Origin: Dimorphilus gyrociliatus
Taxonomy: Eukaryota > Animalia > Annelida
Assembly (NCBI GenBank): GCA_904063045.1
Contig: CAJFCJ010000012.1
Location: 1,302,001-1,366,000, forward strand
DNA: 64,000 nucleotides
Reading direction: 5' to 3'
The notes beneath the pieces are model-generated. The model searched no databases, had not been told where the DNA came from, and saw nothing but the letters and a program-made list of their open reading frames with translations. The position numbers and the translations under genes are program-made. Below, one piece after another: positions 818 through 6,737 of the stretch; within the stretch, counting starts at the first letter, position 1; every line of letters begins with the position of its first letter.

Positions 818-3281
818 CTTCATTTTCTCACTTTCTCCTCATCTTCTCGACACTATCTTTTCTTTTTTCCTATTACAGCTTCAACCTTCCCGTCTACATA
901 TTATCGCTTTTCAGAATGTAGATATGTCAAGAAATTACTTTGAATTAATTAATCATATCTCTATTAAGAATAAAGTAGAATAATCATCAAATATCTCATC
1001 CACTTGTATGGTTGATATAATAAAATATACTTTAAAGCTATCAAACTATCATCTTATCAAATATGACGATTTAGTAAAACATAAAAAATGAAATAGTGTC
1101 AATTAGCAAATATCAAACAATGTTGAATGTAAATACATAAAGATAGAATAAAAAAAAAGAGACGTTACAAACATAAATAAAGCAATAAAATAGTATGATC
1201 ATAAATAAATAAAAATACTAATTAGAAATGTTATAAGCATAACGAAAGATTTCAGTCTAGTTTACATTTAGTCGTGATTATCTTAGAAATAGAAAATATT
1301 TCCATATTATAAGAATAATCAATTAGATTTATGGTTTTTTTCTTTTATCAATAAATGTTAAATTTATATTTTTATATAAACAAAAAACTTGTAGAATAAT
1401 AATTTTTTTCATGAAAAAAAAACAAACTGTCACTATTATCCTATTCAGAATCAATAAATGTTATATTGACGCTTCAATTTGTTGAATTTTACATATAGAT
1501 CTATAAACAGTATATACAGTATAAATAGACGGTTAATATTTGCTATTACTATTCTTACTATTATTATTGTTATTGTTATTATTATTGTTATTACAATTGG
1601 TAATTGAAAAATTAGTAATATGCTTATTTTTTACTGTTAGATTGAAAATGTAACTTTTATCTGCAAAAAAATTCCTTAAATTATGATAAAATTTCAAAAG
1701 ATAAGTGCTATTTTAAAAGTAGTTTAATGTCAAATTAAAAAATTATATCTTTAACCTTTAAGAGTTCAGAAATAGAATCCAATGCTAATAAGATAAATAT
1801 ATTTAATATACAGTATATTCTATATCATATATTGAATATATGATCTATATTACATCTCTTCCGCTTTTTTGCATGTAAAAACATAAAGTTTTTGCAGTCG
1901 ATTAAAAAAATTGCTAATCATTTACAGATTAGTTAAAGTGTAAATATTGTATATAGCAAAAAATGGAGATGAGGAAAGGTAAAATTTTAGTTACAAATGA
2001 ATTTTTTATATGACGATTATAATATATTGTTAATAATAATTGATAATAAGCAATGACAAGATAAGATTATTATTTAGTAATATGTAATATATTTCATTTA
2101 AAAAGTTAATTACAACTAATAAATATTTACTATATTACATAAATATCCATTACTCTGTAGACACATTTCTATTATAGCTCCATATCTTTATCTTTTTATC
2201 AACTTCCACAGGCTTCCTTTTCTCTCTCCCCTCTCCCCTCTCCCTCTCTCTTTCATTTCCTTCTATTTTTATCTTTTCTTCGAAAGTTTATAATACTGAA
2301 TCAGAAAAATTGACAACTAAAAAAAATACAATATTGTTCCTTATTTCGTTCATCTTTACGCAGGTTTTTTTGGTTTGTTATTAATCTGATTGACATTCTA
2401 AACTAGTAATAAGTTATTTTCCTTATTGGATTGCTTATGGGCCATGAACTTTCCGAATAAATCTCTTAAGAGTACGATATAAGCTTTAATATATATATAT
2501 CTTTATTCGACAGTTAAAATATCATCAAAACCATGAATATGGCACAGTTTTTTTTCCTATTTTCTATAGCATTAATACATCTAAAAATATAAATTTATAA
2601 CTAAATTGACGTCAATCTTCTCAACTCTAATTATATTATCCTTATATTGTTAAAATTGATTTACTTATCGTTCATCATTCTTCTTGCATTTACTTGTCTT
2701 TTATTTCCTTTTATCATATATTTTTATTTAATATAGAAATATTTAATAATAAATGGAATGATTATTTTTTTTGGGCTATTTAAATATATTTCTCTTTAAC
2801 TTCCTCTTTACAATTGCTATGCAATAATTTCTATTCTTTTTCCTATCAAATCTCTCCCGCCTCTTCCTCCCTCTCCCGCTTTTAAATATATTACCTCGCA
2901 TTTTTCAAATCTTCTTCTCTGAAAAAGTTGACCTACTCTGGCACTAGATTATAGGTCCTATTGATAAGATAACTTTTTAGAGTATCTTCTTATGGTGTTA
3001 TGCACGCTCCTACATAATAAAGAAAAGACGCACTTTAAATATAACATTGTAATACTGAATAATTAATGATTTATCCTTCTCTGAGTGCGTTCTACTTAAA
3101 ATCTTATCTGCCAACTATCTGATTTGATAATCACTTATCTAAATAATTACTGTACATTCTATTAAAATAATAATCTTTATCAAAAATCCACTACTCTCTA
3201 GTCAGATATAAAGCATAATAAAAACAAGAAACATTCTTAAAGCCATTTCTTTATATTGTATAACTCAGCAGGAGAGTAATT

Positions 3282-5420
3282 ATGATTTTCCGATTGAGTA
3301 TTCTCGTTTTTTGTGTGGTTTTATTTAACCTTTCTCAAGGTGCAAAACTAGAGAAAAAACCGGAAGTAGCTTCAGAAAGTAGGTTTATTATAACGAAAAA
3401 ATATATACTGTGTATTAGCAACACAAGAAAGAACGTAAAATTCTCATAATTTTTTCGTCTCTTCTTTCATTTTAATAGATAAAGTTATTCTTAGCGATAT
3501 TTAAAATTGCTTTTTACTTAACAGAATGCTTAGTAAGCGATTGGAAAGAATGGAACGAGTGTAAATCAAAAAGTGGAAGTTCACTAAACAAACGTCTTAC
3601 AACCATTCATTTAAAACGTAAGAGAATATTAATAAGAATCAGTCTTTCTTTTTGTTTTTTTATTGTTCTATTTAAAATCTATTTTTAGCCGCTCAGTACG
3701 ATTCTGCAAGAGAATGGATGAAGCTTTCCATGGTAATTTATAATAGTTATCCTCTTTTTTCTATCTATCTGACATTTGCTTTTGTTTTTCATAATGGCAC
3801 TTTTCATCCGATAACTAATAGGCGGAGAAGGAAGAATATATAAAATATCTAGAAAAATGTAGAGCTGACGCAAGTTGTCCTATGTTGAATTTGAAGCCGT
3901 CAAAGGGAAGAGTAGACTGTGTAAATGGAATGGCAGGCGAATATCCTTGTAAACTTATTGATCAACTTTCGTTCGTCAATTTGCGTGATTTAGGCAGCAC
4001 TGACCCGCGGTAAGCTATTACTTATTACCTAAAGCGTAAAATCCTTTCTAATTATGTTTTTCCACTCGATTTATCTCTTAGAATGGAGGGTAATGATATC
4101 TGGGGTAAATATCGCACTTTTCACTTTTGTGAATAGAAAATTTTACATAACTCTAATCACATAGGTTGGACTGATCCTCAAACCAACGATGAATACGCAA
4201 TCGTCGGTGTCACTGATGGAACATCTTTCGTTCGAGTAACAAATCCTGAAGAACCAAAAGTCTTGGGTTTCCTTCCAACAAGAACAACTAGAAGTGATTG
4301 GAGAGATATGAAAGTGGTTAACAATCATGCTTACATTGTATCCGAGGCACCCGATCACGGTTTACAAGTTTACGATCTCACGCAACTTAGAGGAAAAGAA
4401 ACTTTTACCGTGCTTGAACCAACTGCAATCTACAGTGAATTTGGCAATGCTCATAATATTGTTGCCAATGAAGAATCAAATACTGTCTTTGTTGTTGGAC
4501 AAAACAAGGGTAATTACCCTAACCTCTGTGCAGCTGGCTTACACATGATTGATGTTTCTAAACCTGCTGAACCAAAATTTTTGGGTTGTTTCAGTGAAGA
4601 TGGCTACGTTCACGATGCACAGTGTCTTTTCTACCATGGTCCAGATGCTGAATATAGAGGCAAAGAAATATGCTTCTGCTATAACGAAGATACTCTAACT
4701 ATCGTTGATGTTACTTCTAAAACTGATGCTAAATTGATATCCAAAGTTTCATACACCGGATATAGATATACTCATCAAGGTTGGTTGCTAGAAGACCACT
4801 CCGCTTTATTGATGGATGATGAACAAGATGAAAGTAATGGATCGGGAGATGGGTAAGTAACACACAATTTAAATCCCTAACAAGAGCAATCATCTAATTT
4901 TAATATTACTTTTCAGACGAACCATTACTTATTTCTGGGATGTCAAAAGTTTGAAAAATCCTGTTCTTATGAACACTTATATTTCTAGCGAAAGAGCTAT
5001 TGATCACAATCAATACATCCTTGGTAATTACACGTATCAATCTAATTACGAAGCTGGTCTACGTATTCTTGAAATTAACAAGCCTGACTGGACTTTAGAA
5101 GAGGTTGCCTATTTCGACGTCATGCCAAAAGAGATTGGAGAAGTAAAATTCCAAGGAAGCTGGAGTAATTATCCTTATTTCAAAAGCCGTAAGTTTTTTT
5201 TTCACCAAAATTGTCACAATTTCTAACTTCATTCAATTACAAAACAGGAAATGTCATCGTTAACTCTATCGAATTTGGCTTATTTGTAGTTCGACCAAGG
5301 TACGATGATTTGCCAAAATCAAAAGAAACAGGTGAACAAATAAGAACCAGAAACATTTTAGACGCCTCACATGCCAAATTTTGTCCTCATCTACTCGAAA
5401 GTAGAGAGTGTAAACCCTAA
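3282..5420 (+). CDS. Secreted choice-of-anchor-B (TIGR04312-like) / LVIVD-repeat beta-propeller protein with TSP1-like termini, 8 exons
   Basis: Manual exons about 3282-3378, 3525-3617, 3689-3732, 3822-4009, 4082-4104, 4165-4852, 4917-5188, 5248-5420; all GT-AG and phase-compatible. Signal peptide MIFRLSILVFCVVLFNLSQG. Family motifs GEYPC, GNDIWGWTDP, SDWRDMKV, DHGLQVYDLT, YVHDAQC, YTHQGWL, IDHNQY, SNYEAGLRI, GSWSNYPYF. Confidence 0.88.
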
Positions 5421-6737
5421 AGTTACTGATTATATTACTCCATCAGTGAAAGAACGCTATATTTCATTTTTTTCAAAGTCATTTTATTAAGAAAACGTTC
5501 TAGAGTACGTTACTATAAATAATTCAACCTTTTTCTAAAGATGAAAGTTAAAATACAGATGAAACACAGTTAATAAAAAGAAGCATTCTTTAATTCTTTA
5601 AGAATTTCCTACATATAATATGAATGAACAACCAGAAATAAACATAAACATTGATAGTAGTTTCTTTAATAAACACTTTAAATATTACGTTCATTATAGA
5701 TTATCTTTATTTATTATTGCGCTGTTAGTTATGTTTCGAACGTTAATTTTACAATCTATATATAGAGGTAGAAGACGTAAAATTGCGGATAAAATATAAT
5801 CTCTTAGCAAAACAGACATGTATATATAAGGAATAATTCTTCATTTTGCATCAAAATAGCAACCTTCCGTTATATAGATGAGTATTAGTATCTATTATTC
5901 GCACCAAAATACAGTTTTAAATTTCAATATATACCATTGCTGTTATCTCTTAAAAAAGATCTTGACATTTCAACACTACACCTAGGTGTTAAAGTACCCA
6001 TTTCCATTGGAGAAGAATTAACAAAAGAAATAAAATAGTGCTACTAAGAGTTAATTAACCATCTTATCGCTGTAACAAATAAATTGCTAATAGGAATAGT
6101 AAAAATCGATATAGTTTAAATTCTTTCCTTTAGAAATATCATCTCTCAACATGGATGGAAAAAAGTAGCAGTTCTATGCTGTTTTTTCTTCTTATTTCCT
6201 TCTATAGAATCCTAATCTTATGAGGTTTGAAGCATGCAAAAAATTGTTCTAAATACATGACAAGAATCAAACAAGAATACGATCATTTCAAAAGTATTAT
6301 AATTTTGAAAGGAGTACTGTCATGTGTTTTATTGATCTTATCATTTCATATACTATATACTGTATTCTGTTAAATTCAATACTAAAAAGAATACTGAATC
6401 TTAAATGTCGAATTCGACATTATATAAGAATAAAAAGCTATTGAAATTATATCAAACCTCTTGGTATCTAATGCATAAAAGAGAAGAAACTAAATTTGTT
6501 TCTTAGTGTATTCGTATAATGGAAAATAATAAACATATCTCTTTAGTTTTATATGCAAAAATAAAAATGAATTACTTGAAGTGAAGCTATGAATTTATGT
6601 CTATATCTTACTTTATACGTATTTTATAATCCTAATATTATATTCAGAATTTTTTATAGCACAATAAAAATCCCTTCACTCCTTCATATCCCGTTCATTC
6701 TCTCTGTGACATATTATTGCTTTTTTTTTCATTTTAA

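What the first reader, a model, noticed from the sequence alone, without database searches (positions are those of the whole stretch)
3525..5417. Bacterial-type propeller apparently inserted inside a split spondin-type TSP1 domain
Seen: after the signal peptide comes KCLVSDWKEWNECKSKSG (3525-3580), and the protein ends TGEQIRTRNILDASHAKFCPHLLESRECKP (5328-5417). Together these read as the two halves of one spondin-type TSP1 repeat (CxVSxWxxWxxC..CG / GxQxRxR...CP.L.E.R.C..C), with about 450 aa of choice-of-anchor-B propeller between them. Established: group-2 TSRs pair C1-C4, C2-C5 and C3-C6. Seen: C3 and C6, one predicted pair, are both absent while the other four Cys remain. Inference: the halves reassemble into a disulfide-linked stalk clamping the propeller. 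I know of no description of this architecture.
Basis: partly seen in the sequence, partly recalled or inferred. Interest (0 to 1): 0.85.

Follow-up and report, generated by a model that had tools for sequence, protein, structure and literature searches.

The report
Propeller nested inside a split TSR
An annelid worm gene encodes a secreted seven-bladed propeller whose two ends carry complementary halves of one thrombospondin-type repeat. The halves most likely rejoin into a disulfide-stapled clasp, a domain arrangement that the paper searches run here did not find described.

Summary
Window 3282-5420 (+) is an 8-exon gene of 525 aa. Its product is identical to the database protein DgyrCDS8828 of Dimorphilus gyrociliatus. 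RNA contigs confirm the splicing of exons 2-8.

Residues 34-50 match the first third of Pfam TSP1_spondin. Residues 497-525 match the last two thirds. About 445 aa lie between them: a helical linker and a choice-of-anchor-B seven-bladed propeller.

The same split occurs in about 95 homologue clusters. The named ones are all annelids (Owenia, Spirobranchus) or a transcriptome of a polychaete parasite. They form one clade (support 99).

Evidence that the halves reunite:
- Most members have 3 Cys in each half.
- C3 and C6 are lost together in 2-3 lineages, Dimorphilus included.
- A 3-residue shortening of the Trp strand goes with a shortened Arg strand, in two clades.
- In AlphaFold2 the N-half is confident (pLDDT 84-88) with the C-half present. 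It collapses to 41-51 when the C-half is removed.

Direct contacts and disulfides were not seen, because no coordinates are returned. The complex test gave no answer.

The propeller family has mostly bacterial members. The nearest relatives, however, are TSR-less eukaryotic proteins of sponges and an amoebozoan. Seven paper searches, three of them aimed at this architecture or propeller family, found no description of it. The scan had not noted it on other DNA.

The parts
3282..3378 (+). Exon 1: start codon, hydrophobic signal peptide (residues 1-20) and a short spacer; ends in phase 1
   Evidence: residues 1-32 of P0191. AlphaFold2 predicts a helix at 2-18. The signal peptide is judged by inspection; no predictor was run. 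The exon 1/2 joint is seen only in relatives' contigs X2 and X9 and in the NCBI model.
3525..3617 (+). Exon 2 (phase 1-1, 93 nt): N-half of the TSR, i.e. strand A with C1, WxxW and C2 (C34-G50 = 3527-3577; C3 replaced by Ser), followed by a short beta-strand (residues 59-61)
   Evidence: PF19028 positions 1-27, E 3.9e-5. The family N-half profile hits only TSR N-termini in the PDB (C9, F-spondin 1szl/1vex). pLDDT is 84-88 in the full model and 41-51 without the C-half. The exon is present in RNA contigs.
3689..3732 (+). Exon 3: start of the long linker helix (residues 69-93)
3822..4009 (+). Exon 4: rest of the linker helix, a Cys loop (C91, C97; CxxxxxCP) and the start of the choice-of-anchor-B domain (C111...C121, invariant)
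   Evidence: TIGR04312 positions 1-29. Invariant columns C111 and C121. The helix and CxxxxxCP motif are shared with TSR-less eukaryotic homologues.
4082..4104 (+). Exon 5: 23-nt micro-exon inside the propeller's first conserved motif (residues 142-148, NDIW)
   Evidence: Joints 4008/4081 and 4103/4164 in RNA contigs of X1, X2 and X9.
4165..4852 (+). Exon 6: main body of the seven-bladed choice-of-anchor-B / LVIVD-type propeller
   Evidence: TIGR04312 E 2.7e-76, 257 bits against a cutoff of 100. 7415 homologues at E<=0.001. pLDDT 95-98. VIA-align Z about 30 to seven-bladed propellers over model residues 112-488.
4917..5188 (+). Exon 7: last blades of the propeller
   Evidence: TIGR04312 positions 259-347, E 1.6e-28.
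5248..5420 (+). Exon 8: last propeller strand (to about residue 485), a short linker, then the C-half of the TSR (G497-P525 = 5331-5417), i.e. strand B with RxR, then C4-P, strand C and C5 (C6 absent); stop at 5418-5420
   Evidence: PF19028 positions 17-48, E 3.7e-3; residues 494-525 alone score E 9.7e-4. Strands at 497-502, 505-507 and 518-523, pLDDT 80-88. RNA contig runs to 5526.

Best explanation
The gene encodes a secreted protein in which a seven-bladed choice-of-anchor-B propeller, with a helical, Cys-containing N-terminal linker, is topologically nested in the strand A to strand B loop of a single spondin-type (group 2) thrombospondin type 1 repeat.

After the signal peptide comes strand A (C1, WxxW, C2, and C3 in most homologues). 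After the last propeller strand come strand B (RxR), C4-P, strand C, C5 and, in most homologues, C6. The two pieces are proposed to reunite into a three-stranded Trp/Arg-ladder module. Its disulfides all run between the halves: C1-C4 and C2-C5 in Dimorphilus, plus C3-C6 elsewhere. The chain ends would thus be tied covalently, forming a clasp or stalk on the propeller.

Shown: the gene model, its transcript, the two complementary TSR matches, conservation, the covariation between halves, and the dependence of the modelled N-half on the C-half.

Inferred: the actual fold, the disulfide map, any C-mannosylation of the WxxW motif, and the function. The working guess for function is a matrix- or glycan-binding TSR face combined with a ligand- or metal-binding propeller face. 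The propeller carries invariant His/Asp/Glu residues, and its best structural match is the LVIVD-type phosphotriesterase Sb-PTE.
For: 1. Gene and transcript: 8 GT-AG exons in frame. The product is identical to P0191. An RNA contig joins exons 2-8.

2. Complementary homology: the N-half matches PF19028 positions 1-18/27 and the C-half matches positions 17/20-48/52, in this protein and in P0005, P0007, P0217 and P0196. 41 of 50 N-halves and 34 of 63 C-halves hit PF19028, with no rival family. The N-half family profile retrieves only TSR N-termini from the PDB.

3. Cysteine logic: most members have three Cys in each half, so each half alone has an odd number. All 13 members without C3 also lack C6. 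On the tree, C3 was lost 3 times (2 on well-supported branches) and C6 went the same way each time.

4. Length covariation: the 7 members whose C1-C2 spacing is 7 instead of 10 have an R-to-C4 spacing of 5-9 instead of the usual 12. They fall in two separate clades. Uncorrected Mann-Whitney p = 7e-7.

5. AlphaFold2 with a 77-sequence alignment: mean pLDDT 90.3, N-half 84-88, C-half 80-88, with bridges and strands in both. With the C-half deleted from the query and all alignment rows, residues 20-46 fall below 50 and lose all bridges. The rest of the model is unchanged.

6. Single origin: TSR-bearing proteins form one clade (support 99), apart from TSR-less eukaryotic and bacterial homologues.
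Against: - No coordinates are returned, so the contact, the ladder and the Cys-Cys distances were never observed directly.
- The two-chain complex test of the isolated halves gave no answer (ipSAE 0.13). The tool states that this is not evidence either way.
- The whole-protein PF19028 score (32.9 bits) is below Pfam's gathering cutoff of 41.
- The C-half family profile alone found no TSR in the PDB.
- The covariation rests on few independent events (2-3 for Cys, 2 for length), and the sign test cannot reach significance.
- One member (P0190) has C3 but no C6. It may be truncated.
- P0236 may also be cut at its C-terminus.
- TSR-less eukaryotic relatives carry a CxGKC motif where C2 and C3 sit. 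C2 and C3 could therefore have another, local pairing.
Confidence: 0.75

Rival explanations
1. The two ends are independent relics. One is an N-terminal WxxW/Cys motif, for example a C-mannosylation or sorting motif. The other is a C-terminal Cys hairpin. They would descend from two different degenerate TSRs (an ancestral TSR-propeller-TSR) and would not assemble with each other today.
For: Each half scores below Pfam's threshold on its own. The isolated halves gave no interface in the complex test (which is not evidence either way). An origin from two flanking TSRs that decayed to complementary halves is evolutionarily plausible and is not excluded by the trees.
Against: Most members have an odd Cys count (3 + 3) in the halves. 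C3 and C6 are lost together. The lengths of strand A and strand B covary. The profile coverage is exactly complementary, with the break at the A-B loop. The modelled N-half collapses when the C-half is deleted.
Confidence: 0.1
2. The halves do touch, but the assembly is not a TSR fold. It would be a different small disulfide-rich cap on the propeller, for example with C2-C3 pairing locally as in the CxGKC motif of TSR-less relatives, and the TSR-like motifs would be only partly homologous.
For: TSR-less sponge and amoebozoan homologues already have CxGKC at the position of C2..C3, plus the same helix and CxxxxxCP linker. The C-half profile alone finds no TSR in the PDB. No coordinates were available to check for a Trp/Arg ladder.
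Against: Both halves hit the same Pfam TSR model on complementary positions in dozens of members. The conserved residues are the diagnostic TSR ones: C-x-V-S-x-W-S-x-W-S-x-C on one side and Q-x-R-x-R...C-P-x-L-x-E-x-x-x-C-x-x-x-x-C on the other. The strand pattern of the C-half in the model (497-502, 505-507, 518-523) fits TSR strands B and C.
Confidence: 0.12
3. The resemblance to a TSR at both ends is chance or an artefact of gene prediction.
For: The motifs are short and Cys/Trp-rich, and the scores are below the gathering threshold.
Against: Whole-protein E-value 7.7e-8. The motifs are conserved across about 95 clusters at 45-60% identity. A transcript contig spans both ends.
Confidence: 0.02

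Closest known systems
Group 2 (spondin-type) thrombospondin type 1 repeats, e.g. F-spondin TSR1/TSR4 (PDB 1szl, 1vex), complement C9 TSR, TRAP; Pfam PF19028 TSP1_spondin
   Same: The same diagnostic residues in the same order: C1-x-V-S-x-W-x-x-W-x-x-C2-(x3-5)-C3, then Q-x-R-x-R, C4-P-x-L-x-E, C5-x4-C6. The N-half profile retrieves exactly these PDB chains. PF19028 is the only Pfam family hit by both halves.
   Different: The repeat is not contiguous. About 445 residues (linker plus propeller) sit between C3 and strand B. The canonical C-x-x-S/T-C-x-x-G O-fucosylation context is absent. In Dimorphilus C3 and C6 are missing. The score is below Pfam's gathering cutoff.
Bacterial choice-of-anchor B family proteins (NCBIfam TIGR04312; LVIVD repeats PF08309)
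   Same: The propeller is 50-57% identical over about 225 residues to many such proteins. It scores 257 bits on TIGR04312. It shares about 34 invariant residues with them, including C111/C121 and a set of His/Asp/Glu.
   Different: Bacterial members have no TSR halves and no CxxxxxCP linker, and they often carry long C-terminal extensions. This gene has 7 introns, a eukaryotic signal peptide, and sits in an animal genome.
TSR-less eukaryotic choice-of-anchor-B proteins (sponges Corticium, Oscarella, Sycon; Stereomyxa; chytrid Quaeritorhiza; 400-490 aa)
   Same: They are the nearest relatives of the propeller on the tree. They have the same N-terminal helix and CxxxxxCP linker, and a CxGKC motif at the place of C2..C3.
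   Different: They end a few residues after the last propeller strand. They lack the C1/WxxW strand and the whole C-half.
Sb-PTE, phosphotriesterase / haloalkylphosphorus hydrolase of Sphingobium sp. TCM1 (PDB 5hrm, 5ioj)
   Same: It is the best Foldseek hit for the whole model (E 3e-10, TM 0.51-0.54). It is also the only PDB sequence found by the family profile, through LVIVD-like blade motifs (E 0.009).
   Different: Only 14% identity. It has no TSR. Whether its metal ligands correspond to the invariant His/Asp/Glu here was not tested.
MSP130 (choice-of-anchor I) proteins of bilaterians
   Same: They are a precedent for a mostly bacterial seven-bladed 'choice-of-anchor' domain in secreted animal proteins, and are also present in Dimorphilus and Owenia (PMC11878542).
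   Different: They belong to a different family (choice-of-anchor I, not B). No TSR is mentioned in that paper. The gene here hits only TIGR04312.

Membership tests
TSP1_spondin (Pfam PF19028), group 2 TSR | Score at or above Pfam's gathering cutoff (41 bits) | tested here: not met
   The whole protein scores 32.9 bits, E 7.7e-8, in two stretches. The halves alone score 24.3 and 17.9 bits.
TSP1_spondin (Pfam PF19028), group 2 TSR | WxxW (Trp ladder) on strand A, flanked by C1 and C2 | tested here: met
   C34, W39, W42 and C45 are present. W and both Cys are invariant or nearly invariant in 50 members.
TSP1_spondin (Pfam PF19028), group 2 TSR | RxR on strand B, followed by C4-P and C5 | tested here: met
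   R501, R503, C514-P515 and C523 are present. R, C-P and C are at least 90% conserved in 63 members.
TSP1_spondin (Pfam PF19028), group 2 TSR | Six cysteines (C1-C6) | tested here: not met
   The Dimorphilus protein has four; C3 and C6 are absent. 36 of 50 full-length homologues have all six.
TSP1_spondin (Pfam PF19028), group 2 TSR | One contiguous domain of about 50-55 residues | tested here: not met
   The halves are separated by about 445 residues (51-496).
TSP1_spondin (Pfam PF19028), group 2 TSR | Three-stranded fold with stacked Trp/Arg layers and C1-C4, C2-C5, C3-C6 disulfides | tested here: inconclusive
   AlphaFold2 gives confident halves, and the N-half depends on the C-half. C3/C6 and strand-length covariation fit. 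No coordinates or contacts were returned. The complex test gave no answer.
choice-of-anchor B (NCBIfam TIGR04312) | Score above the curated cutoff (100 bits) | tested here: met
   Exon 6 alone scores 257.2 bits and exon 7 scores 100 bits.
choice-of-anchor B (NCBIfam TIGR04312) | Beta-propeller fold | tested here: met
   AlphaFold2 pLDDT 95-98. VIA-align Z about 30 with rmsd 2.3-3 over 285-310 residues to seven-bladed propellers.
choice-of-anchor B (NCBIfam TIGR04312) | A C-terminal bacterial sorting or anchoring signal after the domain (the reason for the family name; from my knowledge of the NCBIfam description) | tested here: not met
   The protein ends in the TSR C-half, 40 residues after the propeller, with no hydrophobic tail.
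MSP130 / choice-of-anchor I | Match to a choice-of-anchor I model | tested here: not met
   The NCBIfam scan of all exons at E<=10 returned only TIGR04312 among choice-of-anchor models.

The most novel reading that the evidence does not exclude
A thrombospondin type 1 repeat can exist as a discontinuous domain. In one clade of secreted eukaryotic proteins (every named member an annelid or from an annelid-parasite transcriptome), a whole 375-residue propeller plus its linker sits in the TSR's A-B loop. The reunited TSR acts as a two- or three-disulfide clasp that ties the propeller's termini together. This would be the first TSR shown to host a nested domain, and a natural example of a split, self-reassembling TSR. 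The propeller may additionally be a metal-dependent enzyme that the TSR tethers to the matrix.
Probability: 0.6. Interest if true: 0.72.

Novelty: new variant of a known kind. Interest (0 to 1): 0.62.

Why it matters
TSRs are among the best-studied extracellular modules, in thrombospondins, spondins, ADAMTS proteins, complement, properdin and apicomplexan adhesins. As far as I know they are always treated as small contiguous units, each usually encoded by one exon.

A conserved family in which the repeat is split by about 445 residues yet keeps its Trp, Arg and Cys signature would show three things:
- The layered TSR fold tolerates a very large insertion in its A-B loop.
- A TSR can serve as a covalent clasp for another domain's termini.
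- Domain annotation pipelines systematically miss such cases. Here the score is below Pfam's cutoff, and most members are annotated only as choice-of-anchor B or not at all.

It also gives a natural template for split-TSR protein engineering. Finally, it is an entry point to the unknown function of the large choice-of-anchor-B family, because an animal version with a matrix-type module suggests an extracellular ligand or substrate.

Tried and rejected
- Complex prediction on the isolated halves (residues 30-66 against 486-525): no answer, ipSAE 0.12-0.13, controls not run, my alignment not used.
- Foldseek against the PDB and VIA-align wide on the full model: both lists were filled by propellers (model range 112-488). 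Nothing was learned about the TSR part.
- C-half family profile against PDB sequences: no TSR hit.
- A regex-based measure of strand-B length misfired. It was replaced by an alignment-column count.
- Paper searches for choice-of-anchor B (0 papers), LVIVD (nothing relevant to eukaryotes or TSRs), Pomatoceros with 'regulatory P domain' (0 papers), and TSR with inserted or discontinuous domain (nothing relevant).
- An intact-TSR intermediate, sought by motif among the fetched proteins other than the already-surveyed family block (P0151-P0236): none found.
- Recent transfer from bacteria straight into annelids: not favoured, because the TSR clade groups with TSR-less eukaryotic proteins. The direction and number of transfers remain open.
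Exons were searched one by one by reference. The full-length steps used the database protein P0191, which is identical to the spliced product.
Full report
**Gene and transcript**

The window is AT-rich eukaryotic DNA. Between 3282 and 5420 on the + strand there are eight exons: 3282-3378, 3525-3617, 3689-3732, 3822-4009, 4082-4104, 4165-4852, 4917-5188 and 5248-5420. All introns are GT-AG, and the exons stay in frame for 525 codons.

The exon translations occur in order, with one junction residue between each, in database protein P0191. This is NCBI 'DgyrCDS8828', Dimorphilus gyrociliatus, 525 aa. The window is therefore from this miniature annelid. Its assembly here is 77.9 Mb; the published genome is 73.8 Mb (PMC7854359, listed).

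A 1599-nt RNA contig from a coral metatranscriptome run (X1, about 99% identical) joins exons 2 to 8 at exactly the predicted junctions, including the 23-nt micro-exon 5. Run X14 holds the same joints in pieces. Two runs of relatives about 90% identical (X2, X9) show most of the same joints. There the exon 2/3 boundary appears as a differently placed joint (3603 to 3692) with 17 diverged letters of unchanged length, and X2 includes exon 1.

**What the parts are**

- Exon 1 encodes a hydrophobic signal peptide. This is by inspection; AlphaFold2 predicts a helix at 2-18.
- Exon 2 alone matches Pfam TSP1_spondin (PF19028) at profile positions 1-27 (E 3.9e-5).
- Exon 8 alone matches the same model at positions 17-48 (E 3.7e-3).
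- Exons 4 to 7 match NCBIfam TIGR04312, choice-of-anchor B. Exon 6 alone gives E 2.7e-76 and 257 bits against a cutoff of 100.
- On the full protein, PF19028 scores 32.9 bits (E 7.7e-8) in two stretches. This is below Pfam's gathering cutoff of 41, so standard annotation does not call a TSR.

The part of the N-terminal match beyond profile position 18 is probably not meaningful. In homologues that stretch aligns to a conserved 'FSYPME'-like strand, not to a TSR strand B.

The layout is: signal peptide; TSR strand A (C34, W39, W42, C45, with Ser where C3 would be); a short strand; a long helix (69-93); a CxxxxxCP loop; a propeller (about 108-485); a short linker; then TSR strands B and C (R501, R503, C514-P515, C523).

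**The family**

An exhaustive HMMER search with exon 6 found 7415 homologues. Most fetched examples have bacterial-type architectures that lack both TSR halves.

A word-indexed search with a 60%-identical homologue (P0005) and with P0191 listed about 95 clusters of 440-560 residues with the same ends. I inspected them. The N-terminal consensus is C-x-V-x-x-W-S-x-W-S-x-C-x5-C. The C-terminal consensus is E-Q-x-R-x-R-x(about 12)-C-P-x-L-x-E-x3-C-x5-C.

The named sources are Dimorphilus, Owenia fusiformis (six paralogues), Spirobranchus lamarcki, and a transcriptome labelled Siedleckia nematoides. From my own knowledge, Siedleckia is a parasite of polychaetes, so that sequence may come from the annelid host. 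The rest are transcript-sized contigs of 1.4-2.7 kb from JGI and Logan assemblies of unknown organisms.

Scanned one by one, 41 of 50 N-halves and 34 of 63 C-halves hit PF19028 at E <= 0.1. No other family is hit by more than two. A profile of the N-halves retrieves only TSR N-termini from PDB sequences: complement C9, F-spondin 1szl and 1vex, R-spondin, a TRAP-family protein and properdin. A profile of the C-halves alone finds nothing in the PDB.

**Do the halves reunite?**

Four lines of evidence say yes.

1. Coverage is complementary. The break falls at the A-B loop of the Pfam model in every member tested.

2. Cysteine logic. Most members have three Cys in each half, so neither half can be self-contained. 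Thirteen members, including Dimorphilus, lack C3, and all thirteen also lack C6. On a propeller-only tree, C3 was lost three times (two on well-supported branches), and C6 went the same way each time. The events are too few for a significant sign test. One member (P0190) keeps C3 but shows no C6. P0190 and P0236 may be truncated.

3. Lengths covary. Seven members in two separate clades (three environmental sequences and four Owenia-type sequences) have a C1-C2 spacing of 7 instead of 10, which is one turn of the Trp strand less. All seven have an R-to-C4 spacing of 5-9 instead of the usual 12. The Owenia-type group also has a C4-C5 spacing of 6 instead of 8 (uncorrected Mann-Whitney p = 7e-7).

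4. Structure prediction. AlphaFold2 with a 77-row alignment gives mean pLDDT 90.3 and pTM 0.88. The values are 84, 88 and 80 for residues 31-60 and 80-88 for residues 491-525. There are bridges in the N-half and strands at 497-502, 505-507 and 518-523.

   As an in-silico deletion control, I removed everything after residue 485 from the query and from every alignment row. The propeller and linker kept their confidence. Residues 20-46 fell below pLDDT 50 (blocks 41 and 51), and all N-half bridges vanished. The confident placement of the N-half therefore depends on the C-half.

The tools return no coordinates, so I could not measure contacts, the Trp/Arg ladder or Cys-Cys distances. A two-chain test of the isolated halves gave no answer.

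**The propeller**

The model is a seven-bladed propeller. VIA-align gives Z about 30 with rmsd 2.3-3 to many seven-bladed propellers over residues 112-488.

The best Foldseek hit, and the only PDB sequence found by the family profile, is the LVIVD-type phosphotriesterase Sb-PTE (5hrm, 5ioj). The match is weak.

Thirty-four columns are invariant across bacterial and eukaryotic members. They include H245-N246, H298-D299, H352-Q353, D367-E368, D370-E371 and D407-H408. Several of the His residues sit at the start of blade strands. This looks like a conserved metal or ligand site. That is inference; no residue-level comparison with Sb-PTE was possible.

**Ancestry**

The second protein search also found shorter eukaryotic homologues of 400-490 aa in sponges (Corticium, Oscarella, Sycon), Stereomyxa, a chytrid and unnamed transcriptomes. 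They share the linker helix and CxxxxxCP loop, and they carry a CxGKC motif where C2 and C3 sit. They lack C1, the Trp strand and the entire C-half, and end a few residues after the last propeller strand.

On a tree of the propeller, the 28 TSR-bearing sequences form one clade (SH-aLRT 99). This clade groups with the TSR-less eukaryotic proteins (support 88 and 98), apart from the main bacterial group.

The split TSR therefore arose once. The data do not tell whether a propeller gene landed inside a TSR, whether two flanking TSRs decayed into complementary halves, or whether the TSR-less forms lost the ends.

Only one intact copy exists in this genome. A decayed fragment with stops lies just upstream of the window.

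**Comparison with what is known**

The halves carry the diagnostic residues of group 2 TSRs, but the protein fails three membership criteria: contiguity, the six Cys, and the Pfam threshold. The propeller is a clear member of choice-of-anchor B.

MSP130 proteins are a precedent for a 'choice-of-anchor' seven-bladed domain in animal secreted proteins. They belong to family I and have no reported TSR (PMC11878542).

Full-text searches found no paper on choice-of-anchor B at all, and none on a split or discontinuous TSR. The scan's own notes hold no other instance.

**Verdict**

I rate it a new variant of known kinds: a TSR that hosts a nested propeller. I give confidence 0.75 that the halves form one TSR-like, disulfide-linked module. 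Function remains inferred.

Noticed in passing
L002:1504-1710 and L002:2033-2170 (G000:C12 about 1301146-1301812, 0.2-0.9 kb upstream of the window start): A decayed copy of the same propeller gene. Two tblastn pieces match P0191 residues 202-266 and 363-423 at 35-39% identity, with in-frame stops and deletions. It is probably a pseudogenised tandem duplicate.
   Followed up: partly
window 4082-4104: A 23-nt micro-exon inside the propeller's first conserved motif (residues 142-148, NDIW). It is confirmed by spliced RNA contigs in three runs.
   Followed up: yes
P0299, P0304, P0307, P0320, P0312, P0296: Sponges, an amoebozoan and a chytrid have TSR-less choice-of-anchor-B proteins with the same helix and CxxxxxCP linker and an N-terminal CxGKC motif. 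The family has an old or repeatedly acquired eukaryotic branch that does not seem to be described.
   Followed up: partly
window 4165-5188 (P0191 residues 194-422): Invariant His/Asp/Glu residues occur across bacterial and eukaryotic members (H245, H298, H352, H408, D367-E371 and others). The best structural match is the binuclear-metal phosphotriesterase Sb-PTE. The family may be a metalloenzyme family.
   Followed up: partly
run X1, laid on window 3200-5600: A coral metatranscriptome holds this Dimorphilus transcript with only 7 differing letters over about 1.6 kb. The worm, or a very close relative, was therefore living in that coral sample.
   Followed up: no
P0190: This is the only full-length member with C3 present but no C6; it ends C-E-V-P-K-V. 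It is either truncated or a true exception to the C3/C6 co-occurrence.
   Followed up: no
P0191 residue 320 (window about 4677-4679): The mature protein has 13 Cys. C320, in the C-F-C motif of many eukaryotic members, has no obvious partner, because bacterial members have C-F-N/A/G there. It may be a free thiol or form an intermolecular bond.
   Followed up: no
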